Part shown: in pieces, positions 22,401 through 62,530 of the stretch
Position numbering within the stretch: position 1 is the first letter of the stretch
Layout of the letters: the number at the start of each line of letters is the position of its first letter
Assembly: GCF_000150275.1 (NCBI RefSeq)
Contig: NW_002060950.1
Location: 3,057,346 to 3,121,345 of the forward strand
Length of the DNA stretch: 64,000 bases
Reading direction: 5' to 3'
DNA from: Trichoplax adhaerens
Taxonomy: Eukaryota > Animalia > Placozoa
The notes under the pieces: generated by a model
What the model was told of the DNA's origin: nothing
The model's database searches: none
The model's input: the letters and a program-made list of their open reading frames with translations, nothing else
Position numbers and translations under genes: made by a program

Positions 22401-23357
22401 CTTAATTTTGATTTTGCGAATCATGACCTTGAGTTTGACTAATTTAAAATCTTGTACATTATTAATGCAACCTGTTAGTGTGCACCGATGTCAAAGTCGA
22501 ATATATCGTTGCAGATTAATTAATTAATGCAGTTCTTATTAAATCCAACAGACCCTACAGATAGTTTAAAATCTGGCTTACGAATGTTTCAATTCTGTTA
22601 TATTAAATTATCTAACTTTCCAAATGAATTTGATATATCAATAGATTCATTACCAGCAAGTTGGCAATCAGCTGAAGCAGATACCCAGAAAGATGAACTG
22701 AAATTAATAGTGGAAGTGAGGAATCAGGCAGAAATACAAGAAATTTCCGAACTAGTGCGAGCTAAAGGAATAGATCTAATAAAATTACAGCGTATCCAAA
22801 ATAGGAATCTGTACCGGAGGTATCAGCTACAGAAAGCAGAAGTAACACAAGACGTACAGCAATATCAGCCAGGAACTGTAATTGAAAGGCGATTATTCCA
22901 CCGGACGAATGAGAATAATGTGAATAGTATTTGCAAATCCGGCTTTGATCGAGATTACTCCGGTAAATCTCATGGTAGGTTCAGCTTAAAATAAGAGTTT
23001 TTATCAATGTTAGCATTGATAGATGAGTAGAGCACACTCATTTATGTAGGCTCAAATTAGAAACAATTTACTAAATTTTGTCCAATATATCTACGATTAG
23101 GATCCGCATTAGGAAATGGAACTTACTTCGCCACTGAACCATCCACTACCGTCGGCTATGGGCGTACATTAATTCTGGCTCGCGTACTTACCGGCATCTG
23201 CAATACTTCTGGTAATGTCCGTAATTTGCAATATATTCCAGGCAGTCAGAATAAAAGAATTCATTCTGTAGTGAATAGCTTGTTAAATCCTACAGTATTT
23301 GTAATATTTAACGACAACGCTGCATATCCGGAATATATATTACATGTTCGGCAATAA
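16482..23357 (+). CDS. PARP14-like: PARP14-like paralog C (~1766 aa): long low-complexity N-terminus, KH-like region, 2 macrodomains, KH-like, WWE and ART domain with H-R-T
   Basis: Predicted exons 16482-16497 (ATG micro-exon, tentative), 16598-19325, 19527-19821, 19947-20162, 20237-21695, 22645-22974, 23101-23357; total 5301 nt, open throughout. Macro: FDVIVNS..HFGCQYVYHIP..MAIPAIGAG. WWE: VQWNV..FDLVMNYQLE..IDFIRM..YPIWRK. ART: LPASW..LQRIQNRNLYRRY..ERRLFHRT..GFDRDYSGKSHGSALGNGTYFA..ARVLTG..NPTVFVIFNDNAAYPEYIL. Confidence 0.88.
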
Positions 23358-34200: not shown

Positions 34201-37200
34201 AAATTTCGCTTAACTTTTACCCTTTTCCATTATAGACTTTAGCCATAATATTTCTGACATGAGTGATTCAGACGATTTTTCAACCGCATCCCAACATAGC
34301 CAGAAAGAATTTAAAAGTGACACGGAAAGCATTTGCGATCAAAGGGAATTATGGGGGGAAATAGATGGAGAATTAGAAGAGTTTCCTATAGCTCATCATG
34401 TCAAATTCTTATTGCAACTCATTGAGCTAGATAAGAAATTACGTCTAAAAGGCATTCCTGTTTATTTTAAATTTTTTCAACGATATGGTTATCCTATCAT
34501 AGCCATTAAAATGAATGAACATTATAAACTAATTATTATGCAAGAATTAACAGCACTTATTGGGATTGAGATTAGTAGTGCTGGCTTGACAGAATCGATG
34601 ACGAGCTTTTTATCCAAATATGACGACAATCAACATCATCTAAATAGAAAATTAATGGAGCAATCTATTCAAGCAGGAATTTATAAGAATCAACAAGATT
34701 TCATTTCCATCGTTGCTCTCAATCACTCAGAATATTCAAGAGCAATTTCTTATTTACACTGTGAAATTTCAACCCAATCGATTAAAATTATTGGTGATAG
34801 TTTTAATTTAGTGTTAGATGGTAAGGTCCTGAAGCCCGATTTCCTTCTTAATTTATCGGATCAGCACAAAGTTTGTCTGCAAACCGAAATTGATACCCAA
34901 TCCGCTCATTGTAATATTATTGCGATTGGCTTGAAGGATTCTGTGAAACAAGTTTTAGTTGCTATCAACAAGAGCATTCTAGACTATAAAATGATCCAAT
35001 TTTCGATTGACCAAAAAATCGAAACTGGATCATCTATTTGGTTAGAATTTCTTCGACATCATTTTCATCGTATTGAGGAAGAATATCACTGTTACGTACA
35101 TTGCAAAAATGTTACAAATGACACCCCCGCTAATCAAGATGGTCGAGAAGGAGATATTATTATTCAATGCTATCCTCATGATCAGCAACTTATTTATTTC
35201 CAAATTAAAAAGTTATTTCGTTATTCGTTCGTCCACGAGCAATCAGGCATTAGCCAATTTTCTAGAATGGGTCGATTTCTCACCGAAAATGATGGTCAAA
35301 TTAAACTGCAGAACATTCGAGATGAATTTGAATGCAAAATTGACGTCCATTTTCCAACGGTTTCAGAGTAAGCTTCTTTATATGTAAATGTTGATAGCTA
35401 GAAAGCTAATTAAATAATATCGGTAATTGATATTTTAAACTACGGATTAGTTTTATCACTTTTAGCAATTGTAATACGCATATGATAATTATATTCCTTT
35501 TATTATAAGATAGCCAATTTTGAGCACGTATAACTCATGTTAAGATAACAAATTTAGACATTAGGGACTTTCGCAGCCTAAATCAAACATCATCATCATT
35601 TTCTTCACTATACGTAAGAAATTTCGAATTACGAGAAAATTTATGTCGTTATTTCCGATGAATATCTCAAAATCGAATATTTGAATTAGCTTTCAGATTA
35701 GTAGTAAAATGATACTGAATGTGCAGTAGTTCTACATCGATCTTTATGCGAGCCTGACGCTTTTAATAATTATAACAAAGTTAAAGATTTAGAGCTATCA
35801 AATTGAAATGTATAAGTGTGTGGCAAAATTCCTCACTCTTAAATCTACACTTTTTTTTAGCTTATATCTATCTAGCACTATCTTTAAATTACTAATTTGA
35901 GACTGATTGCTATTACGCTACTGCATGATGCCTAAACAATTTGCTTTGCTTGAACAAAAACTACAGGTCTATGACTGTGGCGGTACTGCAGTACATCATA
36001 ATCTTCAATCACGTGAAATTAATCTTGTACTATTAATTAACGCTAACATAATTTTAATATGACGCAATTCGTACGCAATATATATGTATAGTTAGTTTCA
36101 CTCTCATTTAATATGTAGGTTAGCAATAGCAATATACTACAATTCCAATATAAATGCAGCATTGATTGCTGCTGTCTATCTGAAGTGATTTTCATCGAAG
36201 AGTTCTATCCGAAAAATTATCTTAAAATCACAAATTTCTTAATCTTCATTATCTACCGTAAATGCAATATTTGTTTCACTCTTATATGATACGTAGTTTG
36301 ACCATAATGGTTAACTGTAATTTCTTATGTATAAATACCGTACAGTGGTGATTGCTTCTATCAATTTGAAGTTATTATCTCAACTCAAGAAATAATTTTG
36401 GGTATATTTTTTCCGGAGAATATCCGTAAACCGATATTTCTCCCACGTTTTCTAGACCTATTTCTTAACCATATAACAATCCTTACTAAGGCTTACATTA
36501 CTTTATAAATTCGTCGTGCAGGCATATTACTGAAAAGTATTCTATCCTAAAATTATCAATTTTAGAAGACAGTCTTAATTTGATTATTGGCTAAATTTAA
36601 AATATCCCTTGAACAAAATCATGAGTCAAGATATGACTTCAGAAAAATTTCTCGATTTGATAATGCTCAAAACTTCGTATTTTACCTAGTAGTTTTGGTA
36701 ATATGGGCCAAATTATAGATGAAAAGCATTAGATTCTTCACTCATCGAAAGATTACCGTAGCTATTTGCTGCTAAATGATTTTAATTTGTTTATTAGGCC
36801 TTCAAATCTACTTGTCGATACTCAATACTGCAACTCCTCTACGTCAGAAATTGAAACAACCATTAGTGCAAAGACTCTGCCCTTTAAGGATGTTTTGTAT
36901 CTCACTAGAGATCAAATAATGATCAGCGACATCAAGATAGAACTTATACAAGGACTAATTCAACAACAATCCAAATATGTCAGGATGAGAATAGTAGTTT
37001 TATAGTTCAATTATACCTGCTATTTCAAGCAGTTACTTTCTTTCCAATATGTTAACGATGCTCATTTTGTGAAATTAGGTCGATGCTATTGTTAATTCAG
37101 TCCATTTCAAGCAACATCATGAAGGAAATATTGCAAGTAGCCTGTCTAAATCAGGCGGAAAAGCATACCAAACGGAATGTAAAAGTGCTTTTAAGAAAAT

Positions 37201-40200
37201 GACTAATGATGATATTGCAATCACTGACGGCAAATACTTTGGTTGTAAGAAAGTTTATCATATTCCATTCTTAAGTTCTGACCGGTCATTACAAGTTAGT
37301 GTTAATTCGATAAATATAAATTATCCGATCTTTTTCGTAAACCTATCACTTATCCTATTATTAAATATCAGTAGCTTTGTTGCTATAAGAAATGTTTTCA
37401 CTTTCTTTACTATAGTCGCTGAAAGCTAAACTACTAGAATGTCTACGTCTTGCTAGCAAAGCTCAAATGAATTCAATAGCTATACCTGTGATAGGAATTG
37501 ATGAAAATCATTTACATTATAATCAAATAGCAAGAGAAACATTCCGTGTCATTATAAACTTTGCTCAAGAAAATCAAAGTTCGCAAAAACTAATCCTAAT
37601 ACAAATTGTTATCGACAATAACGCAAGATGTCATCAGGCTTTCCAGAAGGTTTTGAAAGCAGTCAACGAGCAACAATTAAGCCTAGACGAAAATACTGAA
37701 ATTTCACTTATAACACAAAATTTTAACCAGACAACAAAAGAACAGAGTCCGCTATCGAATGCTGTCTTTATAGCAGAGTGTGATAACTATCAAGAATCAT
37801 GTAAAGTATGCGTGGAATATGGTACAACCCTGCACACCGAAAGTCAAGTTTTAATCGACATTACAAATTTGTGTAGTCAACACTTGATATCGAGTAAATT
37901 AACGGAAAATTTTCGATTTCCGACATCTGACCATACTTCAGAAACGATACAATTCGATCCTAGTTGTACAGAAACACCGCAATTATGTCAAGTTTGCCCC
38001 TACGGATTAATAGCCGGTTTTGGTGTTTTATTAACTTGCCTTAATGCAAGTGGTAGAAAATCAATCTTATGTCCCTTATTAAATGTCGATTTTAGTAGGG
38101 AAGATATACACAAATTGATATTGAAGTATGAATTATTCTTAAATCAGCATAAATCACATAAAAGTAAAATTAATTGTATTCGTTTCTTAATGGGTCAAAA
38201 GCAGCGTGCTTTAGAAACTGCTACTTGGATTCGGCAGTATATCAGACAAAATCCAAAATTGCAATGGAAAATCACTCACGACATTCATGAAGATGTTGAT
38301 GGTATTAAGATTTTGATTGCTGCATACGATCAAGAGACGATCTTTAAAATTCAATCGAAGATAGAAGAATGTGTTCCATCGTGGACTACTCAAATTCTTC
38401 CGGTTGATAATTACATATGTAATATGGAAAATGATCACTGGCATCGTTATGCACTTGAACTATGGTGCAAATACAACACCTTCATTAGTAGAAAACCTAA
38501 ACAAGATTCTAGTAGGAATTTACTACTTTACGGCTTCAACAACGATATAACCAACGCAATATCAGAAATTCGTCAACTCACAAAGTTAAAATTAGAGCAA
38601 TTTGCTATAAAAGAAGAGCAAGAATTGAATGTCAATTCTGTCGCATGGGTACTTAAAGTTGGCAATATAAGCTATCCTTTCGATCAAAAATTAAACTACC
38701 AAATAGAAAAAAACTACAAGAATTTTGAAAAAACTAAAAATTGCCAACGTATTAATAACTTTAGCTTTTATATCAGAGCCATAGATTACAAAAATATGAA
38801 GATAGAAACAAGATATGATTGGCAATATAGTATAGACAGAATTATTTACCAAGGTATTTACATGAACACTCTAGATCTGTAATATAATGAAGATATTTCT
38901 TTAAAAAAAGTTGGGCTCATTGCCTGGAGTACGTGATCGCATTTGCTTCATAAAACTATTTCATAGATGACTGGTAGCACAGATTTATTGTTAGTAAAAT
39001 TATACCTTTATTTTAATCTTGGATGACAAGGATTGAATTATGTAGGGCGATACCTTAAGTGTGTTTCTGTGGGTTAGTTCAAATATTCGGTCAGTTTATA
39101 TTCGACATCTAATATATATAGGTATTTTTAATAAGACAGAACATAATGTCTTTATGTATTGCAGCTCAATGCTACTCGTATTCCTAAAGTACTACACGAA
39201 AATTTTCGTTCATGCTAAAAAAAGTAGCAGATTTGTATGAAGTAGTAGTGTACGAATATGTTGGTATGCCAGTTTGTCACGAAGCTGGTTCGTGACAAAG
39301 ATAGTGTAAAACAAATCTCTAAATTACTATAATCTCCGGGATTCAGTATCCCTTAACTATCCCTCAAGAATTTAGACGCCTTTGACTCTACGTTAAACTC
39401 AACTAGACAATTGAGAACTACTTTATTCAACTATCTGACGGGCTTATATACCCTTCTACAGAAGCTAACATTCATGAGTCATCTTATAAAAATACTTAGG
39501 TGAGAACATTTACTAACTAATTTTTCACAGTCGGACTACAACATGTCCATTCACAGAATCGTTTCAGTGCACATTACAGCACAGCATTAAATTTACTGTA
39601 ACATATTTATAACTAGAGTAATCCCTATTGTAAGTAACTAGTTGTAATATATTATCACTATATTATATTAACCAAATTTAGATAGCTATTTCTTCACGGT
39701 AGTTCGTACCGTGACACAGTTTTTAAGAATTCCATAGCCGCTGCTTACTGCATATTTCTGAACATACGAGTATGATACGATGAAGTAATGTATATAGGTA
39801 ATGATTTCCTTCATTATATTATAGAAGATATCGATGTGCCGGATTATTGGCAATATGACTCTATTGACGAAGTCAAATATGGACCTCCTCGGATTATGGA
39901 TGTGGTAAATGAGAAAGAGCGAAAAGAATTATTTGATCTCATAGGATCACGAGGCATTAAAGTTACTAAATTTCAGCGAGTGCAAAATTGGAATTTATAT
40001 TATCATTTTCAACAGAGAAAAAAAGAAATAGAAGCTTCAGTGATTAAATATAAGGCTTCAGTGCCCGTTGAAAGGCGTTTATTTCATGGAACCAAGAGTC
40101 AAAATGTTGAAAATATTTGTAGAGCAGGATTTGATATTAATAACTGTGGTAATGCACTAGGTGAGGGCAATAAAATTAATTTCTACTAAGTGAAATTCTA

Positions 40201-41090
40201 GTAAAAGCTGACTTATATCAGAGTAGGACAAATTTGTAATTATGAGAATTACAGCTCAAATAAAATACTGGCATAAAATAAATTGAAGCAAAACGTTAAT
40301 GGAGCGAGAAACCTATCGTTCATGTCTCAGTGAATTGTAGTTGTCTTGCTATTGTTAGATATTGAGCTAATTCAGAGACTAATTATTTTCCAAGACAACA
40401 CACGGACGTCAGTATCTAAAATTAAAAGAGATTTGCAGAATATAGAAATCTTCGATTTTACTTTTATCCTACATGCTATCATATCTAAGGTTTTGCTTTA
40501 TTTTATATCTATATTTTCGTAGTAATCGAATCATAAATTAATAATCTAACATACAACTACTAGAACTTAAAATAACGTATTCTTTATTGCAATTTAAGGA
40601 TAGCTAATGGCAAAGAATTATTACCACTTTATCCGATTAATTTTAGTACTGAGTAACAGTATTATAATATCAAATAAGAGTAGAATGTCTAAAAGTAGTT
40701 CTATATCTAAAAAGCTATTTAAAATGATAATTTATTGACTTAATTTACTAAATGGCCTATAAAATCACTAATAGTTGTTCTTCAATTAAAGATCGTATTA
40801 TTGATTATGTTGTTATCATTACTACAGGTTTTTTGTATGGTAAAGGAGTCTACTTCGCAAATCAGCCGAAAAAGGCCTTACGTTACGGCAATAAGTTATT
40901 ACTTGTTCGCGTCTTAACTGGAATTTATGCCCAATCTAACTGCAGAGATAAACCTAACTTGCAAACAATTCCCGGTAGTCCAGCAAAACGCGTTCATTCT
41001 TCTGTTGATCAGTTTCGTAATCCAACGATTTTTGTTATCTCTAATGATAATGCAGCTTATCCAGAATACATTTTGCATGGGTACTATTAA
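31214..41090 (+). CDS. PARP14-like: PARP14-like paralog D, full length (start not located): RRM-RRM, KH-like, 2 macrodomains, KH-like, WWE and mono-ART with intact H-Y-I
   Basis: Predicted exons 31214-31308 (tentative), 31615-31827, 32087-32180, 32298-32368, 32677-32845, 33030-33087, 34236-35367, 36798-36978, 37079-37294, 37416-38853, 39825-40160, 40828-41090. Macro: VDAIVNS..YFGCKKVYHIPFL..SIAIPVIG. WWE: VAWVLK..PFDQKLNYQIE..IDYKNM. ART: VPDYW..QRVQNWNLY..ERRLFHGT..YGKGVYFA..VRVLTG..NPTIFVISNDNAAYPEYIL. Confidence 0.88.
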
Positions 41091-44000
41091 TTCTTTTTAG
41101 GCTTAGATCTGTTTGCAGGATCTATCTTAGAGTAACCGCTGAATGTAGTATTGTTAATTAAAATGATTTAAATTTTCTTCCGAGCAGGTCGATATAACTG
41201 TAGAAACAGGCGCCTGATATCGAGATTAACTATCGACAATGTCGAGTACGATAACTTCGTAAAATGAATAGAAGAATTTGCCTGTAATCATAATAGCATT
41301 GTTCAATTTCAATTTATGATTAGGATCTATCCAGAAAGCGATAGTACTTAGATTAAAAGATGTGGTAATAAAAGCAATTAATCTATTCTAGCTAATCTAT
41401 AAATCTACTGTACACAAAATGGTAACAATCTCACTCAAGGTAGAATTTAAAGAAAGTTTTCATTTCAAGGTTTTAAAATAGTGAAGTAATAATTAACCAG
41501 TAAGCAAATGTAAAATAAGATATCTTGAACTAGATTCAAATTGCCAGCTCCTGTCGTTAGTTCTTAGATAAATATGTATAGCTCAATGCATATACTACAA
41601 TAAGGTTACCTAAAATCAAGCATAAATCCCTAAATAAAGCATTTAAACCATCATCAAAATATATAAGGTCGCAAGAATCGAACTGTTCAGGATATGATCA
41701 CGCTCCTATTAATGGTATCGGGTATCATTATGATTACAGTGCACTTATTCACATATATCTTACGCCCTTAGCTAACGGACTACCGGTTCTATTACTTACT
41801 AATAGTGTCTGATAGTTATCGAATAATATTAAGAGTAAATATTCTTCTAATATTAGAAATATAACAGATCTTTCTTTGAAATAAAGAAAAAGTACGTGAC
41901 AATATTGTGCACTACATTCTTAATTAATTGTATAGAGTACTAACAGATCTTCAGACTTTCAAGTAGACAAAATGGCGTAGATATATAATCTGTTTTACCG
42001 CTATCATATATTCTGTACCTTGAAAATTCCGATAAATGTGGATGATTTCCATAATTTTGAGAGTCTTTTCTAAAAGTCAATCTGCAAGACAAGACTTGAA
42101 AGTGTATTTAAGTTCTTTAGCCTTCTAGAAGTTCATTACATAGACGATTGCGAGTAGTTTTGCATGATCTTTTCGTTTTGCTACAATTTAAAGAATTTAA
42201 TATCTATGTTTTATATTGACAGTGAGTTTATTCGTAATCACATAAATTACACTTATATGATCATGCCCTTTTGAATTTTCTTCATGCCAAAACATACCAT
42301 AACTTGCTATAGCTGTAATATATAAATGGAATTGATTCTTAAAAATATGTACAATGTCCAAATGCTTTAAAATTCTTTCTTAAACAAGGAATTTGATTAT
42401 TCTATTACTGAGCCAAATTGTCGCGTATTTATATTTCATTTTAGTCTAAACATAATCTTTAATATATTAGTATAGACATTTTGCATTGTATCAAATATAG
42501 AGATAACTTTACATTCTATTACAATTACAATTATACTGAAATATAGCTTGTTATGTTTAGTTAATTGTAGCACCTACAGTCTTCGCTATTTCATACAATC
42601 ATTTTATTATTACTTTGTCTGTTTATGGTAAATATCATATTTAATTCTGCTGTCCTGCTCTCTGCATGCATTCTTATCTCTTAATATATAAATATAGATT
42701 ATTTCTGCCTCAGATTTGTTAGTTACACTTGTTAGTGTTAGATAATATTATTAATTTTCAATCAAAATATCTAGTTCGATACACGCATCATGTGTACAAA
42801 CTTACAATAAATAAGTACATTTGATAATTTTGCAGTTTAGATAGCGTCGCTAATAAATAAGTAGGTGTGACGGAGCTCTATCCGAAATGAATAATATTTT
42901 GATCTAATATGTGTAATAATGTTACTATGGAGGTTACCGATCTCGGCAACAACCTAGTTGTTAATTGAATTTTGTTATTAATTATCGTAGTAGAATACAG
43001 CGTGACACATGAAACTATATATAAGCTTGAATATTACTTTTTAATCTCAGTTCCACTGAGGCTAACGTAGGGTACACTGGTACAAACGTAAGCAAGCTAG
43101 TAATAAATGTATTTATTAACCTAAACCTATCGTTTTGACTTGATTACTATAGTATAGGAATAAGTTAGTTTTCTCTTACTGAGGATCTCCAGACTTAGTC
43201 GGAGAACCATAAGGTAGATAGACTAGTTTAGGTACGTTCACGAAAGATGTTTTGTGACAGTAGGCCATAGCACTAAAAGAATAAAAGCATTATCCACACC
43301 TAGAAGAACTATAGTTACTTTACTTTAATAAATGGAAGAGCAAAAAATCAAGGAAATATACCGACTAATAGAAACGTTTTGTAATAGCTTGCAAAGCTGT
43401 ATAAAGAGATAGAGCTTAAAATATCATTATAGGATATATGAGTCAAGTTCGATACCTCAAATTAAAACGTTAAGATATTAGTTAGGAATTTAGGATCTAG
43501 CAAAAATTGCTGAATGCACGACATTTTATAGAAATTATTGCAGCAATAAAGCTAATTAAATTGCATCCTATTCAGAATTTCGTTTACTCATAGAAGGTTC
43601 TGAATACATGCTGTTCTGTAGCTAAAAATAAATTGTAAATTTTAATTAAAAAATTAAAATTTACTATTTATTTCGTAAAAGTGAATGATAGTGAATTAAA
43701 TACAAAGCCTCTGTCGTAATGTAAGGATAACTAGAATGAATTCAAAGTCCAAAATTCTATATTATTGAAACATACAGAAGATGGATATGATAATCTCGAG
43801 CGTCTATAACCTAGCAATATTTTATGTCTGTTTGTTTATTGACTAAGTTACAATATCAGCGATTTATAAATTAATTTCATAATCTTACAATTAGAATTAG
43901 CCATTGGACACCCTTAACTTCAATTTAAGAACATAAATTTACATAAAGATATAATTACCTTATCTTGTTGATTGTAAAGCTTTAATCCGATGAAAACAAC

Positions 44001-44154
44001 ACGAGGAAATTTGATTGAAGGCGATTACGCTCCGACTACTATGTATTACTACCTGACAACACATTAGCTTATCAATTCTGACATAACGTTATTAACATGT
44101 GTATTTTAATTAAACAATGAATTAGTGCTTACAATTAATTTATTCATTTTATAG

Positions 44155-44411
44155 GGAGTTTGCATGGTACAGGAACCTATTTCGCATATCAGCCTCAAAA
44201 GGCCTTACAATACGGCAATATGTTACTATTCGTTCGTGTATTAGCAGGAATTTATGCAAAATCTACCGGCAAGGACAAACCTAATCTGCAAAGGATTCCT
44301 GAGAGCCAATCAATACGCGTTCATTCTATTGTAGATAAAGCACATCATCCAACAATTTTCGTTGTCTCTAACGATAACGCAGCTTATCCGGAGTATTTTC
44401 ACTTGTCTTAA
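44155..44411 (+). CDS. Duplicated terminal exon encoding the C-terminal half of the ART domain (alternative last exon of D, or an orphan relic)
   Basis: Acceptor ttcattttatag| at 44154 is in the same phase (1) as the acceptor for 40828. Open frame GSLHGTGTYFA..VRVLAG..PTIFVVSNDNAAYPEYFHLS*, 56/81 aa identical to the 40828 exon. AATAAA at 44493. Confidence 0.75.
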
Positions 44412-45159
44412 TATTGATCATTTAGGTTTAGATATCACTACAGAAGACATAGCTTAGAAAATGATAACATGTCAACGTAATTGATACGGTGCAATAAACG
44501 TTAGTTTAATGATCAGTACAAAAATTTAAATGTAATGAAAACTACTAATTAGTTTAATATGACGTGCCAGATAATTGTATAGGAAGTCATAATCACAGAT
44601 ACTTATCAGACATACGTATTATACTCTACAAATGTTTCGTCTATATTATCGTCTATGTTCCTACAAGCTGTTCTTACCCAATTTTTTCTTTATATTGAGA
44701 TAATAAGTCCATTAACTCTTTCTAGATTAGGGATGCTTTATTGTACGCAAACAAATATTATAATTTAGATAAATAATAAAATATTATTATCTAATTACAT
44801 TTGGATTTATACTGAGTCATGCAGTGTCGATTTATTTTGGTGATACAAATGTAAATCAAGACCTTATTTCTGTAAGATAGTCCAAGTTCATCGACATGAT
44901 CTCTGCTATAGCAGGACGACCGATAATGATTAATTATCCTTAAAGATGCGTGATGCAGAAAAAATACTTCAGACCAAAATTTTATTTCTTTAACCATTTT
45001 AGATTAGTATGACTCAATTCAGGCACTGATAGTAGATAGATGCTTCTAATTATTGTTTTATATTATTTAGTCCACTCATTTCTACACGTGGATCCATTCA
45101 ATCCCGATAATGGATATCAATGGCTACAATTTCGTGCAAATAATAGAACTACCGTACTG

Positions 45160-45782
45160 TCACAAAACAGCTTTGCAACAAGATAACGCAATATACGATG
45201 AATAAGTCAATTCCTTGAACCACGTATCAAGGAACGATATCTGCACTATCACGAACACTTTTGCTCTTCTAGCAGACTACACAAAGACTTAAACGCCTCG
45301 TATTTTACGTTAAACACCAAGTTGGATAATTCTTTATTTCACAATATACTGCATTTATATACTACTTCTCAATAGTTCATGAGTCATAGTTAATACAATT
45401 AACATTACAATCATTTACTGAATTAGATATTAATTTTAGCTACTGCTCCCTTAATGCAGACAACAGTATTTACGAACATAGACATGTAATGACTAATACA
45501 GAATAGTCAGATTACGATCTGTCCTATCACGGAACATTTCCATGATAATTTACAGTCTACCATAAGTAAATTACAATCACAATGATTCGAACTGTAAGCA
45601 GATGATTTGCATTCCCTATTATAACTATTAATTTCAGTATGTGTATAAGTGTTACTGTCATAAAAAGTCAGTGCTATATTAAAACCCAGTATATCCAAAT
45701 TAGAAGTTAACTAAATAAGGATAGTCTAATAGAATTATCCTAACATAGATATTTCTACTGTAATACAGTATATAACACTGTA
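45160..45782 (+). repeat. Dispersed ~625-bp repeat, copy 2
   Basis: Diverged direct copy of 27610-28238. Confidence 0.9.
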
Positions 45783-46860
45783 ACACGTACCTAAGATTGC
45801 ATAAAAATGCCTTGAAAATCATTACAGTCGCTATATCTCTAATTTAAGTCAGAAATCCATGTACTTTATACCGTATATCTGTTTAAATCTATTTAAATTC
45901 ATTAATAAAGTAGTATTAACTATTAAATAACGATTACTTCGTTATAATAAAACGATATTAAAATTAAGAAGTAAGTGTACTGTATTTAATTCTTGAAATT
46001 TGAGAAATACTTCACTAAAAATTTTAGCGTGGCCAAGCTACTATATAGTATTATTAAGTTTGCTTAAGACCTACCCTTACTAGCTAAAAATTACGGTATG
46101 TTTTGGTAACCTTAGCTATTATCTTTGAAAAATCTGTTAAGCTTTGGCTGTATTGAAGTTTTCAATTGCATGTTAACACAATTGTAGCAAGTAACCACTG
46201 ATAACATTTATGAAAATCCCAAATCTTGTAATTTACATAATGTTACTCTTTAGTGAGAGCGGATTTCATACTAAAACATAAAACATATAGAAAAAGCATC
46301 GCAATTTCTAACAGACAACATGGCTCTTCATTAGATATCAAGTATATATATAATAGAAAACAATTATTCAATTAGGTCAGGAAACATCAATAATTACTAT
46401 TTAATAATCGTTAAATATATCATTACGTAAATATAAAAATAGTTTTACCTTTAATTATTGTAATGATCTCAGCTGATTGTAGTAGTACAGTATGTGGCTA
46501 ATAGGGTCAAACGGCGCACTTGAACTATTTCTAGTATGAGACTGTAACAGCAGAAGACTATGACACGGTCATTACAATTTATATAAAGCTAAAAAAGCGT
46601 AACAATATATTTAATAATTTTTAGTTCTATATACAGTTGTACGATCAATCGTAGGACAAAAGCTTTCAATATCCTATTGCTTGTGCATTATTCAATATAT
46701 AAAATTTTAATAAAGATATTTTTGGATTTCAAAATATCGTATGTATAGTGCTTTTTGTCGTTAAATGTCCTAGTATCATGTTTGAGCTTCAATGACTAAT
46801 ATAAACTATTCCATGACAATAATTCTATATTCCTGAATTCTGAGCACTCTCCGAAGTGAG

Positions 46861-49800
46861 TCATGATACTAATTTTTCAAATTTATGCAAATAATCATCT
46901 ACATATGTTAACAATTTCCAATAATCGGTAGCAATTACAAATTTTATGTAGTGATCTAAATGATGATAACATTTCAGTAAAACATGATATTGAGGCGGAA
47001 GATACCAGCCAATCCAGATCTCATCTGCAAAATTTTGATATTTAAATTTAAAAGAAAGACTAATCATATACTTGGAAATTAAAACAATACACCTTAGAGA
47101 CGAAATTTAATAATTACCAGTTTGATCAATAACATAAACAGAAAGTGTTGATACCAAAGTATCCTGCAATTCTTGAGAGTCAGCTTGATTTAGACAGCAA
47201 ATTGATATTGCACCAAGTTTTCCATCTCCAGCCCTAATAGAAATTTTTTCATGACAAAACTTAAAACAATTTGAAATCTCTAACAAGTATGTATTATAAT
47301 ACATTTTGCATTGGTTTCCTTCAATGTATGACCACAGCTGCTCGAAAAGGATTCTTTTCGAAAGGACCTCATTATCATTCTAAAGATAAATGGAAGACAC
47401 TTGATATTCATATCGTTAAGAATATATCCTTAACTAATTGCAGAAGTTACAAATTATAGCCATAACCAAGATCATCTTTTGATATTAAATCTGAACATAC
47501 TATAAAGTAATCTGTTGGCAAAGCTAAAGGAAGAATAACATCTTGAAATTCAATGGATAATGGATCCAGCGGGGCAATACATGTTCTATTTTCGTTGTCG
47601 GTAACTGTAGCTCTTAAAGAAAGTATATACGCGTAAGTTATCAGTAACTTATTATCACATAGCAAAGAAGCTAAGTAATGAGTTCTTAAAATAACTTACT
47701 TAATATTCAACGTGCATGGCAAAGGATCAACACTTTGAATCTTAAAAAAAACCGTTTGACAACCTGTGCAAATGAGCGTACAAATCAATTTTGAAGTTAC
47801 AATAACCAAAATATGAACATTTTATCAAAGGCTTGCAACTATTTTCATAACAGAGCGATTTTATAACATTATTCACCTGGGTTAGGTGCGCTAGATATCT
47901 CCTTCGATAGGAATGACACTGTAACATCTAGTCATCAATGGGAAAATTATCACTTACAATATAGTTGGTGACAATGCAACTTTACAAACGCTAAAAATTT
48001 CTCTGCAAGTATTGAAATAATTACTATCCTCATACCATTAACGCTTTTGTAATTGCTATTGCTTTCTAACTCCAGTACAATAGCAACATACTTCTTTTCA
48101 TAGTCAACGGCTAAATCTTCCTTCTATTTTGTGAAAGATAAATACTAATTCAATCTTAAAAATAAATTATACTGCATACAGTAGAAGACAATAACGTCAA
48201 TATGTATATTTGAACCAAATCAGCTTGATTTACATATCCAATTAAGAGATCGAATTAATCCTATACTTACGTAATAGATAAAACATTCAACATTTATTGT
48301 CCACAACTCTTCCGAGCTAGTTAGTTGTTTAAAGTAATGATCTAATAAACCTATTAAGTTTTAGTAAGGGCCTGTGTCAGTAGATGCCTATTACTGCTAG
48401 ATATATTATGGTTATGACAAACACAAACCTTCTTCTCGTACAATATCTCCGTAACTTATAACTAAGCGATCGCGTTTGCTATTAAAATCGACTGCTGTAT
48501 ACATATTTTTAGGAACCCTATCGGTATGCCAAGAATCCAGGTATAAATTATGAGCATCTTTAACATCAGATTAAATACAAAGACAGCCTAATTTTTCACA
48601 TAAAATGACAGCAATAGCTTACTTTGCCAATGATATTCCTAAATCGTCGACTTCTATGACCGGCAAATCAACTTCTTTTGATAGTTTCGAGATATCGTCT
48701 ATTACCATAAAAACAATCTTTATGCTAGTAATCTTAAAATGCTACTAAGTTACCAAACGTTGGTGTACAATAGCAAATCTTACCTACTACAATTTTTGAA
48801 ATTAATTCTAACTGATTATTACTTGAACCTGCCGACAGAATAGTTCTCAACTATAATAAGAATTCGAATAATTGTCCACAATGTAAATTTAACCGTCAGA
48901 CCAATGAATCATGTAAAATAATTTACCTTATCATTAGAAACGCTTGTTAGCAAACAATAGTACATATACGCTTGATCTTTAATATCTTAATAAAACGTGT
49001 TAAGAATAAACTTTTTGAAATATGAGGATTATCAACTACTAAAACTTATGATTTGAAATAGCGAGAAAGTAAAAGGATACCAACATCATTAAAATAATCT
49101 TTCATCTTCATCAAAACTTCACATAAATCTATAAAAACAGTACATCTTGCATTAGCTAAATATATTTTTGCGCTATTCATACACATATTTCTATAAAAAA
49201 TTTCTCTTGTTACCTTTCAATATGTATGTCGTATCATGGTTTATCATTATGCAACGGCAAATAGAAAGTACTGCTTGACCAGTTTTCCACATGCCAAACT
49301 GACATATATCACTGGTTTCAAGAAGATTTTGAAGAAATTGCACGATAACCTTTATATAACAATTTTTAATATCATTGAATTACAGATATAAATAGTAATT
49401 ATTTATCTAATTTTACTATAGTTCAACTACAAAAAGCATGTAGATGTTTCGTGTTTAAGTTTCAAGGCAATTATACCATCGGTTTGATTTCCTTTTCTTG
49501 TGCAGAGACTTCTAGCAATCGTAAATGATCTAATAGATTGGGCAATACTTGGGTCATGGGTATTACAGAGGCAATATAATCCGTTAAAGATTTCAACACG
49601 TTCAGTTGAAATCCGCTAAGTAGAAAAGTAAATTTACACAAAATTATAATTTAACGTGAACATTTTTATCTCTAAAAAACATAGAAAGTAACCGTCTATA
49701 ATGGCAGGTTTGAATAATTACGGTACCTGCCAGTATGCGTGTCCGAAATGCAACGAATAAAATTTAGTATATGGATTGTGAAATTAGGATGGCGCTTGAC

Positions 49801-52800
49801 AATTGTTAGGACACAACTGCACATACTGCTAGATAAAGACTTGTTGCTGTCAAGAAACCTTTGACAAAAATTGTAGAATACACGTAATAGTGTCGTTACA
49901 GCTAAAGAGCTAGCAGCAATGTCAGTACGCTGCATAAGTCCAGTTAGACAGCCGATAAGGATTGTCGTCGTCTCTACAGCAAATAACGTCAGCAATGTAA
50001 ATTTTTACCATTAGTTGAATTTAAGATAATTAATTTAACATTGTATCATGATTTCTATCGTACCTCTAGATTCACCCAATTCAAAGGAATGGTTTAATAT
50101 GATCAATTTACGTAAAATTATGTCTAAAAGGCAATTTTAAATTTTTAATGTCATTGAAAATAGTAACACGAATAGGTAACAGCAACTTTATTTATTACCG
50201 AAATTGTCATAGACTTGCGGATAAAACCAGACGATAAGGTTATAATCCCAGAAATAGGGTAAAGAAATGTCTTTTGTGCAACGCATTCCAATCGGCTACA
50301 ACGATTCAAAGTCATATTCTTTTATTTAGCCTGACGAGCTAAGTTTTGCAATCGTTATCATTTACGACTACAAATACCGACCTTACTATCATCCGGAAAG
50401 TGCATGATCCATTCGCAATAAATCAATTGCTGTTCTTGCGAAATCATAGGAGACCGTATCATCAATACTAGTCTAGAACACAATTCAGAATAATTAACTC
50501 AAGAGTAGATTTCTAGTACATTTAATCATCTGAATGCGGTCCATTTTTAATAACATTACCGTTCTAAAAGGTAATAATCGTCGTCTTGATTAAATAATTC
50601 GTCCCCACATTTCATCTACTCATGAAAGACAAATACTGTATATTATGTTGTTTACTTCTTACCTCAGTTACATGTGCAAGATTATAATCATAGCTAGAAT
50701 ACTTTAATCGATCATAAATGGTTACCTTAAGTAGCATTACTGATTGAAGTGAAGGTAAATCGCAAGTAACCATCTTTTGTAAAATAAGTAATTTAAAGGT
50801 CTGAAAAATTAAGCATAACATAGTATATATATATTATCAGTCTAAATTGTGGAGCTTATAGTATTAGCACAGATATACTTGATAGGAACATACCTTCTGC
50901 GATAGTCTGGAAACTGTAACACATTCTACAAGCTGAACGATAAAGATTAGATTACCAATAGGCTAATTTTATTTAAAGACAGCAAAACACTTATTACCTT
51001 AAGGACTACCAGCATTTGCCCAGTTGGCGTTAACAGCATAAAATTATCGGAATCCATAACAAAGGAGATGATTGCTTTCAACTGGTTGCTGTCATCATCA
51101 GACAGCAGTGGCTCAGCACTATTAACCATTTCAAGATTGGACGTAAAAGATAAATTCTTTTCCAAAAGAGCCTAAATTTCAGAATTAAGTAGCAAATATA
51201 AATTTACCGTTAAAGTTTAATGCATACATAAATTATTTCTATTGCAGAAAATTAATGGGAATTGAAATATAAAACCACCTTAGAAGACTCTAGTTTTCCA
51301 TTGAAAAGATCTTTCAAAGACAAATTGCTAAAATATATTTACAGAATAATGGAATACAATTTTGAGCTAATTAAATGAATGCCAGAGGAGCATAATATCA
51401 CAGTAAATCATACTTGCGTGGTTCATGAATAATGCATTGAATGGCATTCTTTAAAACTGTAGTGAAAAGAATCTGCGGTGACAACAGTCGATCAATGTGT
51501 TATGAAAACGTCACAGAATAAGAATTTCTGATCGATAGAATTTAGAATAAACGATTTTCATGTCAACTTTAGAAAATGTATTAGCCTTCTACATTATTCT
51601 CACGACATCAAGTACTGCCTCATAAATTGCAAGATAAATTCTTGGCATATCTCTAATATTATGCTTTAGTCGTAATTATCTCACCCAATAGTGTTGAAAA
51701 ATATGGCTGCATTCCGCTTGGCATAAGTTGTAATAATAGTCCAGACGATGGCCAAGTAAGCCCTTGATATAAAAATTAAAAATAGCACATTAACAAATTG
51801 ATGTACAAGGACGTAATAATTATCAAACATTCATTTCTACTAGGCTATAAGAGATATAAGAAATGCATGATTAGTTTTCGGTTTAAGCACCGGGTATAAT
51901 TGCTCTATTTCTGTCAAGCATTGACAAGCCAAACCCCTAAGAATACGATCAGTTCCAGAATTGATCTGTCGAATGATATAAAAAGAAATTTTTAGACTAG
52001 AGACTAGAATCGCAAATATGAAATAATCAATGCTACACTTACCCTATCAATTCTATTCAATAAAATTTGGATTAAGGTTGCAAACAAGTCAGGAAAAACA
52101 TTCTATATAAAATTAGGAGGAAATTTTGATTATAGCAAGTATTACTTTCAATCGATTTTAGGATTAGAATAAGAAACGATATTGACCAGTACATCTAGCT
52201 AACTCTTCCATTGATTAGTATTACCCAATGACTACCGATCTTTGTGCATATTGGTATATACCACAAACTCTTTTTTAATTGTTGGTGCACAATAATAATA
52301 ATCAATTACCTTGATATCAAATTGAATCACTAGCGAAGTGATAGTAATCATAATCTAGACGGTGAAACGAAAGTTAGTAATGCAATTGTACTGAAGAGAG
52401 AAATAACATTATTATGCGATATTAGATCGTTTATACTAAAATAGGCAACATATTCCTCATTACTGTGTATCGTTACATGCTATGTTAGGTTACTAACATA
52501 AGTAGGGAATACAGTTTCTGGAATTTGGATTTGCTGTAGAACTCCTAATAGTGAAGCAATAGCTTGTTCTTGACTATTCGATGCATAAATAAATTTAGTT
52601 AAAAATAACCAGATATACTTATGTAACAATACTATACGTAAAGCATTACAAAGAAACAATCAGAGTCGTATGTGTAGTTGATATTCAATTGGTATACGAG
52701 TATCGTAGCTTTTTTCCATTACCTGGTTTCATCCACTAATAGAATGTCAGCCTGAAATAAATAGTCGGCCCATCGTTAATTAGAATTTGCATAACATAAT

Positions 52801-54013: not shown

Positions 54014-54208
54014 CTAGAATCACAGTGGACTAACCAAAGTAGACGAGACTACAACGATCAGTAAACGAGGCTATTTGCATCTATGCAATGACATTCAATT
54101 ATTTGCCACTGGTGGACTCTAGTTCTGGCATCCACTTGTGAGCAGCGCCACCTTGCTTCCCCTAGTACAGGAATGGACCAAGGAAGATTGCGCCATCAGC
54201 AAAGACAT

Positions 54209-54605
54209 TACAGTACATTGTACACAGTACTGGACAGTATGGTACTGTACACTGTACACTGTACGGTAGTCGCCGACAGACCGAATGCGGTTCACATTTT
54301 GTCCGTCCAGTACAGTACAGTATAGTACAGTACAGACCAGTACACAGTATTTCAGATATTTGATGGCAAAGTACTGTACACTGTACACTGTACAGTCAGT
54401 AATACAGTATGCGGTATGCAGTACTATAGTACTGTCCAGTACTGTACAGTACAGTAGGATTGTATGGAGCACTGACTGAGAGTACAGTACTCACTCAGTA
54501 CAGTACAGTACTTTATCACGAGTGTACAGTACTGTACAGTACATACAGTACAGTACAGTACAGCACACTACTGTACTAAGTACAGTAGTATGTACTGTAC
54601 CACTG
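54209..54605. repeat. Degenerate (ACAGT/ACTGT)n microsatellite in mixed orientation at the AP5B1 5' end
   Basis: For example cagtacagtacagtatagtacagtacag, gtactgtacactgtacactgtacagt and acagtacagtacagtacagc. Confidence 0.9.
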
Positions 54606-58623: not shown

Positions 58624-59688
58624 ATGAATAGTCTAAATGTTACTAATACATCCACCAATAACACTATTAACCGTCTAAGTACATCAGCAGAATTACTTGC
58701 TAGATTAGGAGCGATAACTTTGGTAATAATTGGCGCTGGTATCATCCTGAACATTATTTTAATTATTGGCACCCATTTTAAGAAATCATTACGTAAAAAA
58801 ACATATTATTTTATGGCTAATCTTGCTGGCTGTGATCTACTTTTTTCTCTGTCAATTATATCTACCGTAATTACTGCAATTAATACAAGCAGAGCTCCAA
58901 TACCATCGCATATTCACACAATCCTATGTAAAGTCTGTATCGTCTTCCCTGCCTATTGGTCTTATACAGCCTCTGTGCAAACGTTAGTTATAATTAGTCT
59001 CGAGCGCTATAGAGCTATCTTTCGGCCTACTAAAAAAATAACCCCTAAAAAATGTAAAATGTTATGCGCTTTAGCCTGGATTATTTCATTATTTATTTCA
59101 CTTCCATTCCTATTCACTGCTAGGTCTATTGAAAACCAATGCCTTCCTTTTCCAATTTATTCTCACTGGGTCATTATTGTCAACTTCATCTTGATTATAT
59201 TTCAATTTGTTATTCCAACCATAGTAATGATTACTGCTTATACTTTGATATTGCATCAGCTTACCACGAAAACGACTGCGATTGGACAGGAATCCACTAA
59301 TAGTAGAAATCTTAAGCGTAAAACCGTTTATATGTTGCTAGTAACAACTATTACATTTTTATTATGCGCTCTGCCTTGGACCTTAACATTACTTTTCGAA
59401 GCTACTACAGGCAAGTTTGCACCTGAGTTACTGCTACATGATAATAAAACCAATCCAGCAATGAAAATGATCGTTACATTTAGTAGGATAACTTTATCGA
59501 TATCAACCGTCTACAATCCAATAATTTATTGTATATTCAATCGTGAAATCCGATCACTATTTTTTCCATGCTATTATCGACGCAAAAATAACGCAGTAAC
59601 TACAACTAAAGTTTCTTTCGCTCCAGAAAAAAGCAACTCTTACCAGACAATCTCAGTAAAACCGGTGATAAACCCAATGAAAGCCTGA
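58624..59688 (+). CDS. Single-exon class A (rhodopsin-family) GPCR, orphan, peptide-receptor-like
   Basis: 354 aa with seven hydrophobic segments and N-terminal NxT sequons. TM1 GIILN, TM2 NLAGCD, TM3 CK..SLERYRAI, TM4 W..SLP, TM5 FVIP, TM6 FLLCALP, TM7 NPIIY, helix 8 NREIR. Confidence 0.95.
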   Translation: MNSLNVTNTSTNNTINRLSTSAELLARLGAITLVIIGAGIILNIILIIGTHFKKSLRKKTYYFMANLAGCDLLFSLSIISTVITAINTSRAPIPSHIHTILCKVCIVFPAYWSYTASVQTLVIISLERYRAIFRPTKKITPKKCKMLCALAWIISLFISLPFLFTARSIENQCLPFPIYSHWVIIVNFILIIFQFVIPTIVMITAYTLILHQLTTKTTAIGQESTNSRNLKRKTVYMLLVTTITFLLCALPWTLTLLFEATTGKFAPELLLHDNKTNPAMKMIVTFSRITLSISTVYNPIIYCIFNREIRSLFFPCYYRRKNNAVTTTKVSFAPEKSNSYQTISVKPVINPMKA

Positions 59689-62480: not shown

Positions 62481-62530
62481 NNNNNNNNNNNNNNNNNNNN
62501 NNNNNNNNNNNNNNNNNNNNNNNNNNNNNN
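62481..62530. other. Assembly gap (50 N)
   Basis: Run of n characters. Confidence 1.

What the first reader, a model, noticed from the sequence alone, without database searches (positions are those of the whole stretch)
40161..44498. Two alternative catalytic C-termini for paralog D: duplicated last ART exon
Seen: the His-containing exon ends at a phase-1 donor (40160). Two downstream exons, 40828-41090 and 44155-44411, each have a phase-1 acceptor, an intact frame, a stop and a nearby AATAAA (41367, 44493). They are 69% identical (56/81 aa). I see no second copy of the LFHGT exon between them. Differences fall at the D-loop end (GFLYGKGVY vs GSLHGTGTY) and in the loop just before the third triad residue (SSVDQFRNPTI vs SIVDKAHHPTI), while core motifs are kept. 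Established: these loops shape acceptor and substrate recognition in ART domains. Inference: alternative last-exon use could give one sensor scaffold two enzyme specificities.
Basis: partly seen in the sequence, partly recalled or inferred. Interest (0 to 1): 0.85.

Follow-up and report, generated by a model that had tools for sequence, protein, structure and literature searches.

The report
Duplicated last exon of a placozoan PARP
A PARP14-like gene of the simple animal Trichoplax has a second, intact and selectively conserved copy of its last catalytic exon 3 kb downstream, which most likely serves as an alternative ending of the enzyme, but no RNA evidence could be obtained.

Summary
Paralog D of a Trichoplax adhaerens PARP14-like cluster ends its His exon at a phase-1 donor (40160). 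Two homologous terminal exons follow: E1 (40828-41090) and E2 (44155-44411). Both have phase-1 AG acceptors, open frames and family-typical stops. Genome-wide there are 15 such last exons but only 14 His exons, and E2 is the only orphan. No decayed upstream exons lie between E1 and E2.

E2 evolves as coding sequence:
- dN/dS is 0.27 (p=6e-5 against 1).
- Amino-acid change is symmetric against an outgroup (9 for E1, 8 for E2).
- The two exons align without gaps over 237 nt, while the flanks share no detectable similarity.
- Differences sit in family-variable columns.
- E2's acceptor is strong and family-typical.

A copy that was neutral since the duplication is rejected.

No annotated or transcript-derived protein carrying E1 or E2 was found. 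A recently orphaned relic of a deleted tandem paralog remains a serious rival. "Two specificities" is inference only.

Verdict: a plausible alternative terminal exon (about 0.55). It is a new variant of a known kind and moderately interesting.

The parts
34259..38882 (+). Upstream body of paralog D. It is PARP14-like, with a KH-like region, a macro domain and a middle region, and consists of several exons.
   Evidence: tblastn of the family proteins P0040, P0002 and P0007 gives collinear hits at 34286-35347, 37079-37294 and 37437-38858. Open frames are 34259-35371 and 37467-38882.
39798..40160 (+). His exon of D. It is the N-terminal half of the ART domain, carries RRLFHGT, and ends at a phase-1 GT donor at 40161.
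   Evidence: Translation. Pfam PARP PF00644 scores 29.2 bits against a cut-off of 26.7. The acceptor AG at 39796-39797 was read, and the exon start is inferred from it.
40828..41090 (+). E1, the proximal terminal exon. It is the C-terminal half of the ART domain with GKGVYFA ... NPTIFVISNDNAAYPEY and a TAA stop.
   Evidence: It aligns to residues about 105-195 of the PARP15, PARP10 and PARP14 catalytic domains. The acceptor PWM score is -1.0.
41367..41372 (+). AATAAA 277 nt after the E1 stop. It is a candidate poly(A) signal and weak evidence.
   Evidence: The hexamer occurs about once per 620 nt in the window.
42855..43262 (.). Fragment of a dispersed repeat between E1 and E2. The genome holds at least 40 copies at 85-95% identity.
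   Evidence: Query positions 1756-2163 of 41100-44150 match the repeat. In other copies the two halves are separated by about 180-450 nt.
44155..44411 (+). E2, the distal orphan terminal exon. It is the C-terminal half of the ART domain with GTGTYFA ... HPTIFVVSNDNAAYPEY and a TAA stop.
   Evidence: It aligns to PARP14 residues 125-184. The acceptor PWM score is 11.0, in the top 0.1% of AG sites. dN/dS against E1 is 0.27.
44493..44498 (+). AATAAA 82 nt after the E2 stop. It is a candidate poly(A) signal and weak evidence.

Best explanation
E2 is a coding exon kept by selection. It arose by tandem duplication of the 3' end of paralog D, or of a whole D-like gene. It is most likely used as an alternative 3'-terminal exon of D.

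Transcripts would splice the phase-1 donor at 40160 either to the weaker proximal acceptor at 40828 (E1, with its own stop and poly(A) site) or, skipping E1 and its poly(A) site, to the stronger distal acceptor at 44155 (E2). Either choice completes a PARP14/PARP10-type mono-ADP-ribosyltransferase domain with an H-Y-I triad. The two versions have different C-terminal halves: the end of the D-loop, the Tyr strand, the acceptor loop and the strand carrying the third triad residue.

Shown here: the anatomy, the orphan status, and the selective constraint on E2. Inferred: that the splice happens, and that the two isoforms differ in function.
For: - Both exons are intact with the same phase and family-typical stops.
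- E2 is the only one of 15 last exons in the genome without its own His exon 100-1300 bp upstream.
- No other + strand gene lies between D and the convergent AP5B1 gene, which ends near 46861.
- dN is 0.20, dS 0.81 and omega 0.25 by NG86, and omega is 0.27 by GY94 maximum likelihood. The likelihood-ratio test gives p=6e-5 against omega=1 and p=0.0096 against 0.625, the value expected for a neutral E2 with E1 at 0.25. This omega lies within the 0.10-0.36 range seen between complete paralogs.
- The relative-rate test against the outgroup P0001 gives 9 E1-specific and 8 E2-specific changes. Tree branch lengths are E1 0.48, E2 0.40 and P0001 0.11.
- DNA similarity covers the coding part only (40832-41068 against 44159-44395) and is ungapped.
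- In a neutral simulation at 0.4 substitutions per site, only 3% of copies keep the frame open and amino-acid identity falls to 44%.
- Differences prefer family-variable columns, p=2.5e-4.
- E2's acceptor is family-typical and in the top 0.1% of AG sites, and is stronger than E1's.
- E2 scores 115 bits against a family HMM. Annotated paralogs score 90-144.
Against: - There is no RNA evidence of any kind.
- No annotated or transcript-derived protein carrying E2, or E1, was found in 5.8 billion proteins or 1.84 billion representatives.
- The required intron of 3,994 nt would be the longest in this gene family. The corresponding introns in the other paralogs are about 140-1250 nt.
- E2 carries three of the four E1/E2 changes at family-invariant columns: T35A, G56E and I88F. 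It also scores 12 bits below E1 against the family HMM.
- The test against omega=0.5 is only borderline, p=0.057.
- A recent loss of function cannot be dated out.
Confidence: 0.55

Rival explanations
1. E2 is an orphan relic. A whole D-like tandem paralog, the normal mode of growth of this cluster, lost everything except its last exon in a fairly recent deletion. E2 was constrained while that gene lived. It is now unused and has simply not decayed yet.
For: - The cluster evolves by birth and death: 12 last exons lie on this scaffold, spaced about 9-12 kb apart, and paralogs A and B have no ART exons at all.
- E2 has three substitutions at family-invariant columns and the lower family-HMM score.
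- No protein model or transcript fragment contains E2.
- With 0.05-0.1 neutral substitutions per site, an open frame is still kept in 29-51% of simulations.
Against: - Change in E1 and E2 is symmetric, 9 against 8. This limits any neutral phase to roughly the last quarter of the time since duplication (my estimate).
- E1 is itself accelerated relative to P0001 (0.48 against 0.11), which is not expected if E1 had stayed the only functional ending.
- The deletion would have had to remove about 7 kb cleanly and leave no trace, yet spare the acceptor, which is still in the top 0.1% of AG sites.
Confidence: 0.35
2. E2 is a dead-on-arrival partial duplicate that has been neutral since the duplication. 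Its likeness to E1 reflects only a young age or gene conversion.
For: Partial 3' duplications do occur in tandem clusters. Poly(A) hexamers near both exons are expected by chance.
Against: - omega of 0.27 is far below the minimum of 0.5 expected if one lineage were neutral.
- dS of 0.81 is not young.
- At 0.4 substitutions per site only 3% of neutral copies stay open.
- There are no indels over 237 nt although the flanks cannot be aligned.
- Differences avoid conserved columns.
- Conversion would give identical tracts, not an evenly spread excess of synonymous differences (19, 16 and 27 by codon position).
Confidence: 0.04
3. E2 belongs to a separate transcription unit. It would be either the last exon of an unrecognised gene whose upstream exons are unlike the family, or a non-coding or antisense transcript. 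Alternatively it is an assembly artefact.
For: 3 kb of unannotated DNA lies upstream. The draft assembly has a gap elsewhere in the window, at 62481-62530.
Against: - 84 residues that form only the C-terminal half of an ART fold cannot fold alone (established knowledge of the PARP fold; alignments).
- There is no ORF of 70 aa or more, no family exon and no Rfam match in 41.1-44.15 kb.
- There is no N run near E2.
- E2 is 22% diverged from E1 at the DNA level, so it is not a collapsed or duplicated assembly copy.
Confidence: 0.06

Closest known systems
Human PARP14, PARP15 and PARP10 catalytic domains (mono-ADP-ribosyltransferases with an H-Y-L or H-Y-I triad)
   Same: E1 and E2 each align to the C-terminal half of these solved domains, including the RVLTG strand, the acceptor loop, the strand with the hydrophobic third triad residue and the AYPEY tail. 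The His exon passes the Pfam PARP threshold. Full-length paralogs in the cluster carry macro plus PARP domains, and their best non-placozoan matches are vertebrate PARP14. Trichoplax macro-PARPs were placed in PARP clade 3B, next to PARP14/15, in PMC2964712.
   Different: As far as I know (own knowledge), no vertebrate PARP14, PARP15 or PARP10 swaps half of its catalytic domain through duplicated terminal exons. D is a divergent lineage-specific paralog, with a His exon only 38-46% identical to its neighbours.
Mutually exclusive tandemly duplicated terminal exons, for example Drosophila pipe and the 3' variable regions of the immune receptor PGRP-LC
   Same: Homologous terminal exons lie in tandem, each with its own stop, and are chosen one at a time. 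[quoted passage not shown] As here, the swapped part is a functional half or domain of the protein.
   Different: Those cases are proven by RNA and have more copies. Here there are only two copies and no transcript evidence, and the enzyme family is different.
ZAP (PARP13) long and short isoforms
   Same: It is an antiviral PARP-family protein whose C-terminus is set by alternative terminal exon or poly(A) choice (own knowledge, not tested here).
   Different: In ZAP the choice is between having and lacking the inactive PARP-like domain. It is not a choice between two homologous catalytic halves.
Orphan exon relics in birth-and-death gene clusters
   Same: An isolated homologous exon sits next to a complete paralog in a fast-evolving tandem cluster, which also contains truncated members (A and B lack ART exons).
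   Different: Relics normally show omega near 1, stops and indels. E2 shows omega of 0.27, an open frame, no indels and a strong acceptor.

Membership tests
PARP catalytic domain (Pfam PF00644), PARP14/PARP10-like mono-ART type | Significant match to the PARP catalytic domain profile | tested here: met
   The His exon scores 29.2 bits against a cut-off of 26.7. E1 scores 25.1 bits and E2 16 bits; each is only a half domain and falls below the cut-off on its own. E1 and E2 match solved PARP14, PARP15 and PARP10 domains at E of 2e-6 to 9e-6.
PARP catalytic domain (Pfam PF00644), PARP14/PARP10-like mono-ART type | Catalytic triad of His, Tyr and a third residue, which is hydrophobic in mono-ARTs | tested here: met
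   His sits in RRLFHGT. Tyr sits in G-x-G-x-YFA in both E1 and E2. Ile in P-T-I-F-V aligns with the Leu of PARP14 and PARP15. The assembled domain was not folded, because the joined sequence was left out by rule.
PARP catalytic domain (Pfam PF00644), PARP14/PARP10-like mono-ART type | ADP-ribosyltransferase activity | not testable with these tools
   This needs recombinant His-exon+E1 and His-exon+E2 domains and an NAD+ automodification assay.
Macro-PARP (PARP clade 3B/3C) architecture | [quoted passage not shown] | tested here: inconclusive
   D's exon at 37079-37294 aligns at 51-56% identity to the macro region of paralogs that carry PF01661. Pfam found nothing in the two large D open frames scanned alone.
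Tandem-duplicated alternative (mutually exclusive) terminal exons | Two homologous exons in tandem with the same phase, similar length, and each with its own acceptor and stop | tested here: met
   There are 84 aligned codons, phase 1 and an AG acceptor in both, and TAA stops.
Tandem-duplicated alternative (mutually exclusive) terminal exons | Purifying selection on both copies | tested here: met
   omega is 0.25-0.27, with p=6e-5 against 1. Amino-acid change is symmetric at 9 against 8. Differences sit in variable columns, p=2.5e-4. A recent relaxation of selection in E2 is not excluded.
Tandem-duplicated alternative (mutually exclusive) terminal exons | Transcripts that join the common upstream exon to each alternative | not testable with these tools
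Protein searches found no spliced fragment of D.
Tandem-duplicated alternative (mutually exclusive) terminal exons | A separate poly(A) signal for each terminal exon | tested here: inconclusive
   AATAAA lies at 41367 and 44493, but the hexamer occurs about once per 620 nt by chance.
Tandem-duplicated alternative (mutually exclusive) terminal exons | Both copies conserved in related species | tested here: inconclusive
   Only one D-clade exon from another organism was found: P0001, from ENA, 70% identical to both E1 and E2. Its contig could not be fetched. Two metagenome scans gave no placozoan D-clade locus.

The most novel reading that the evidence does not exclude
One PARP14-like sensor scaffold in a placozoan makes two mono-ADP-ribosyltransferases. 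It does so by swapping the C-terminal half of the catalytic domain (Tyr strand, acceptor loop and third triad residue) through duplicated alternative terminal exons. This would be exon-level diversification of an immune-type ART, comparable to PGRP-LC or pipe in flies and not described for any PARP.
Probability: 0.45. Interest if true: 0.6.

Novelty: new variant of a known kind. Interest (0 to 1): 0.45.

Why it matters
Macro-PARPs such as PARP14 evolve fast and are tied to host-virus conflict. They are usually thought to diversify by whole-gene duplication. If D really uses both endings, a basal animal diversifies the catalytic and acceptor-loop half of an ADP-ribosyltransferase by exon choice on one scaffold. 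That would give a natural pair of chimeric domains for asking which half of the ART fold sets target choice. If E2 proves to be a relic, the locus is just a snapshot of birth-and-death evolution in the Trichoplax PARP14-like cluster.

Tried and rejected
- Protein searches for spliced D fragments or gene models all failed to find any protein with E1 or E2. The E2 query found only P0001. The His-exon ORF found nothing. The representative search gave a best hit of 60% identity, a different paralog, plus a spurious repetitive hit, P0008. The ART region of P0002 returned other paralogs only.
- Two metagenome scans gave nothing, then only matches of 34-39% identity.
- Remnants of upstream exons between E1 and E2: none above chance.
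- Similarity of the flanks of E1 and E2: none.
- Rfam on 40161-46800: no match.
- Long-range inverted repeats that might loop out E1, for example 40756-40771 with 44140-44155 and 41260-41278 with 44133-44151: they are short, AT-rich and not tested against chance, so I give them no weight.
- The exons were searched separately by reference.
- Branch-specific dN/dS was not possible. The only close outgroup is a protein without DNA, and other paralogs are saturated at synonymous sites.
Full report
**Setting.** The window is G000:C1407:3057346-3121345 of a 105.6 Mb, 1414-contig genome with about 31% GC. Exact cluster look-ups show that the family proteins are Trichoplax adhaerens models (TRIADDRAFT_58766, TRIADDRAFT_64129 and others, on a 3,375,187 bp contig) and their Trichoplax sp. 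H2 orthologues, which are named PARP14, PARP9 or PARP11. The organism is therefore the placozoan T. adhaerens. The window holds part of a tandem cluster of PARP14-like macro-PARPs. Mapping seven full-length family proteins onto the window gives these units:
- A at 883-4687, with no ART exons.
- B at 9289-13825, with no ART exons.
- C at 18202-23354.
- D at 34286-41081.
- The isolated exon E2 at 44151-44405.
- A further paralog from 62532 onward, directly after an assembly gap at 62481-62530.

**The observation.**
- D's His exon (RRLFHGT) ends at a phase-1 GT donor after 40160.
- E1 (40828-41090) and E2 (44155-44411) each follow an AG, each complete a Gly codon with the G at 40160, and each run open to a TAA.
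- They share 56 of 84 aligned residues and 77.6% of 237 ungapped nucleotides.
- AATAAA stands at 41367 and 44493. With 103 copies on this strand of the window, that is close to chance.

**E2 is the only orphan.** A six-frame search of the whole genome finds 15 last-ART exons but only 14 His exons. Every last exon has its His exon 100-1300 bp upstream, except E2. All 15 keep an AG acceptor in phase 1.

The 3.06 kb between E1 and E2 holds no trace of upstream family exons. tblastn with 158 open frames from paralogs A-E gives a best E of 0.002, from an intron frame, while ten shuffles of the interval give 0.001-0.015. The full-length proteins give nothing there. The interval does hold a roughly 400 nt fragment of a dispersed repeat at 42855-43262, and it has no Rfam match.

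The next gene downstream is a convergent AP5B1 homologue on the minus strand, whose C-terminal exon ends near 46861. E2 therefore lies in D's 3' territory, with no other + strand gene available to use it.

**Is E2 under selection?**
- DNA similarity between the two copies starts at the acceptor and fades before the stop (40832-41068 against 44159-44395). The flanking intron and 3' sequences cannot be aligned.
- Nei-Gojobori gives dN 0.20, dS 0.81 and omega 0.25.
- A pairwise GY94/F3x4 likelihood fit gives omega 0.27. It rejects omega=1 (p=6e-5) and 0.625 (p=0.0096, the value for a neutral E2 with E1 at 0.25). It is borderline against 0.5 (p=0.057), the floor if E1 never changed. Complete paralog pairs in the family give 0.10-0.36.
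- P0001 is a D-clade exon from another organism, a 95 aa ENA ORF that is 70% identical to both copies. Polarised against it, E1 has 9 private changes and E2 has 8. Seven other outgroups also show no significant asymmetry.
- On a protein tree the three form a weakly supported clade (81/35) with branch lengths E1 0.48, E2 0.40 and P0001 0.11. Both Trichoplax copies are accelerated, and E1 is no less so than E2.
- In neutral simulations at half the observed dS (0.4 substitutions per site), the frame stays open in 3% of trials and amino-acid identity falls to 44%. At 0.05-0.1 substitutions per site it stays open in 51-29% of trials.
- E1/E2 differences fall in columns that vary across the other 13 paralogs: mean majority fraction 0.54 against 0.76, p=2.5e-4.
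- E2 scores 115 bits against a family HMM built without the D clade. E1 scores 127, P0001 136.5 and annotated paralogs 90-144.

From these results I conclude that E2 has been a translated, constrained exon for most of the time since duplication. My rough bound from the 9:8 split is at least about three quarters of that time. A dead-on-arrival copy is excluded.

**Points against full health of E2.** Three of the four E1/E2 differences at columns conserved in 90% or more of the family are on the E2 side: T35A in RVLTG, G56E in IPGS and I88F in PEYI. The fourth, T7V in GTGTYFA, is in E1. This could mean functional divergence or early relaxation of selection.

**Splice signals.** A crude acceptor matrix built from the 13 other family acceptors scores E2 at 11.0. 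Leave-one-out scores within the family range from -8.8 to 19.5, and E2 is in the top 0.1% of the 3,791 AG sites in the window. E1 scores -1.0, in the top 7.5%. A weak proximal site with a strong distal site is the arrangement that allows alternative use, but the matrix is small. The distal choice needs a 3,994 nt intron. That is longer than the corresponding intron of any paralog, which run about 140-1250 nt.

The protein collections do contain spliced Trichoplax transcript fragments, such as P0004, which joins the His exon and last exon of another paralog. No protein of any length carrying E1 or E2 turned up. This says nothing about E1 versus E2. It only suggests that D is poorly represented in these collections.

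Joined models (His exon plus E1 or plus E2) were neither searched nor folded. Each exon was handled separately by reference.

**Mechanism and comparison.** Both endings align to the C-terminal half of the solved PARP14, PARP15 and PARP10 domains. Both keep the Tyr of G-x-G-x-YFA and an Ile where PARP14 and PARP15 have the third-triad Leu. With the His of the upstream exon this gives an H-Y-I mono-ART, as established for PARP10-type enzymes. That the two endings change target choice is inference only.

Trichoplax macro-PARPs were placed in clade 3B, beside PARP14/15, by PMC2964712. The closest known systems for the proposed mechanism are tandemly duplicated, mutually exclusive terminal exons. 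PMC9013439 cites Drosophila pip for these, and the 3' variable regions of PGRP-LC.

**Verdict.** The interpretation survives two of its three own refutation tests, and the third could not be run.

| Reading | Probability |
|---|---|
| Alternative terminal exon of D | about 0.55 |
| Recently orphaned relic of a deleted tandem paralog | about 0.35 |
| Neutral since duplication | about 0.04 |
| Separate transcription unit or assembly artefact | about 0.06 |

If true, this is a new variant of a known kind, with moderate interest.

Noticed in passing
window 42855-43262: Fragment of a dispersed repeat with at least 40 copies across many contigs at 85-95% identity. Elsewhere its two halves are separated by about 180-450 nt that are missing here. 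It is probably a small non-autonomous element.
   Followed up: partly
window 46861-52700, minus strand: Multi-exon homologue of the AP-5 complex beta subunit (Pfam AP5B1_middle and AP5B1_C hits on several minus-strand frames). It is convergent with paralog D and bounds D's 3' territory.
   Followed up: partly
window 58624-59688, + strand: Intronless 354 aa rhodopsin-family GPCR ORF (7tm_1, E=1e-39). It sits between the AP5B1 gene and the next PARP14-like paralog.
   Followed up: no
window 62481-62530: A 50 nt run of N (assembly gap) directly before the first detectable exon of the next PARP14-like paralog (62532 onward, 66% identical to TRIADDRAFT_58759). Its upstream exons may be missing from the assembly.
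   Followed up: no
window 54119-54600: GC-richer patch with a CAGTA pentamer and 19-mer tandem array (54308-54344 and 54496-54600). It creates long spurious ORFs on both strands.
   Followed up: partly
window 22527-22994 (paralog C): C's His exon reads RRLFHRT, with Arg where the family has the Gly of H-G-T. This agrees with an earlier first-reader note.
   Followed up: no
window 40828 and 44155: By a family-derived acceptor matrix, the proximal exon E1 has a much weaker 3' splice site (-1.0) than the distal orphan E2 (11.0).
   Followed up: partly
paralog D as a whole, window 34259-41090: No annotated T. adhaerens or Trichoplax sp. H2 protein carrying D's last exon appeared in any protein search, although models for neighbouring paralogs did. 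The public models of D may stop in the intron after 40160 or may be missing.
   Followed up: partly
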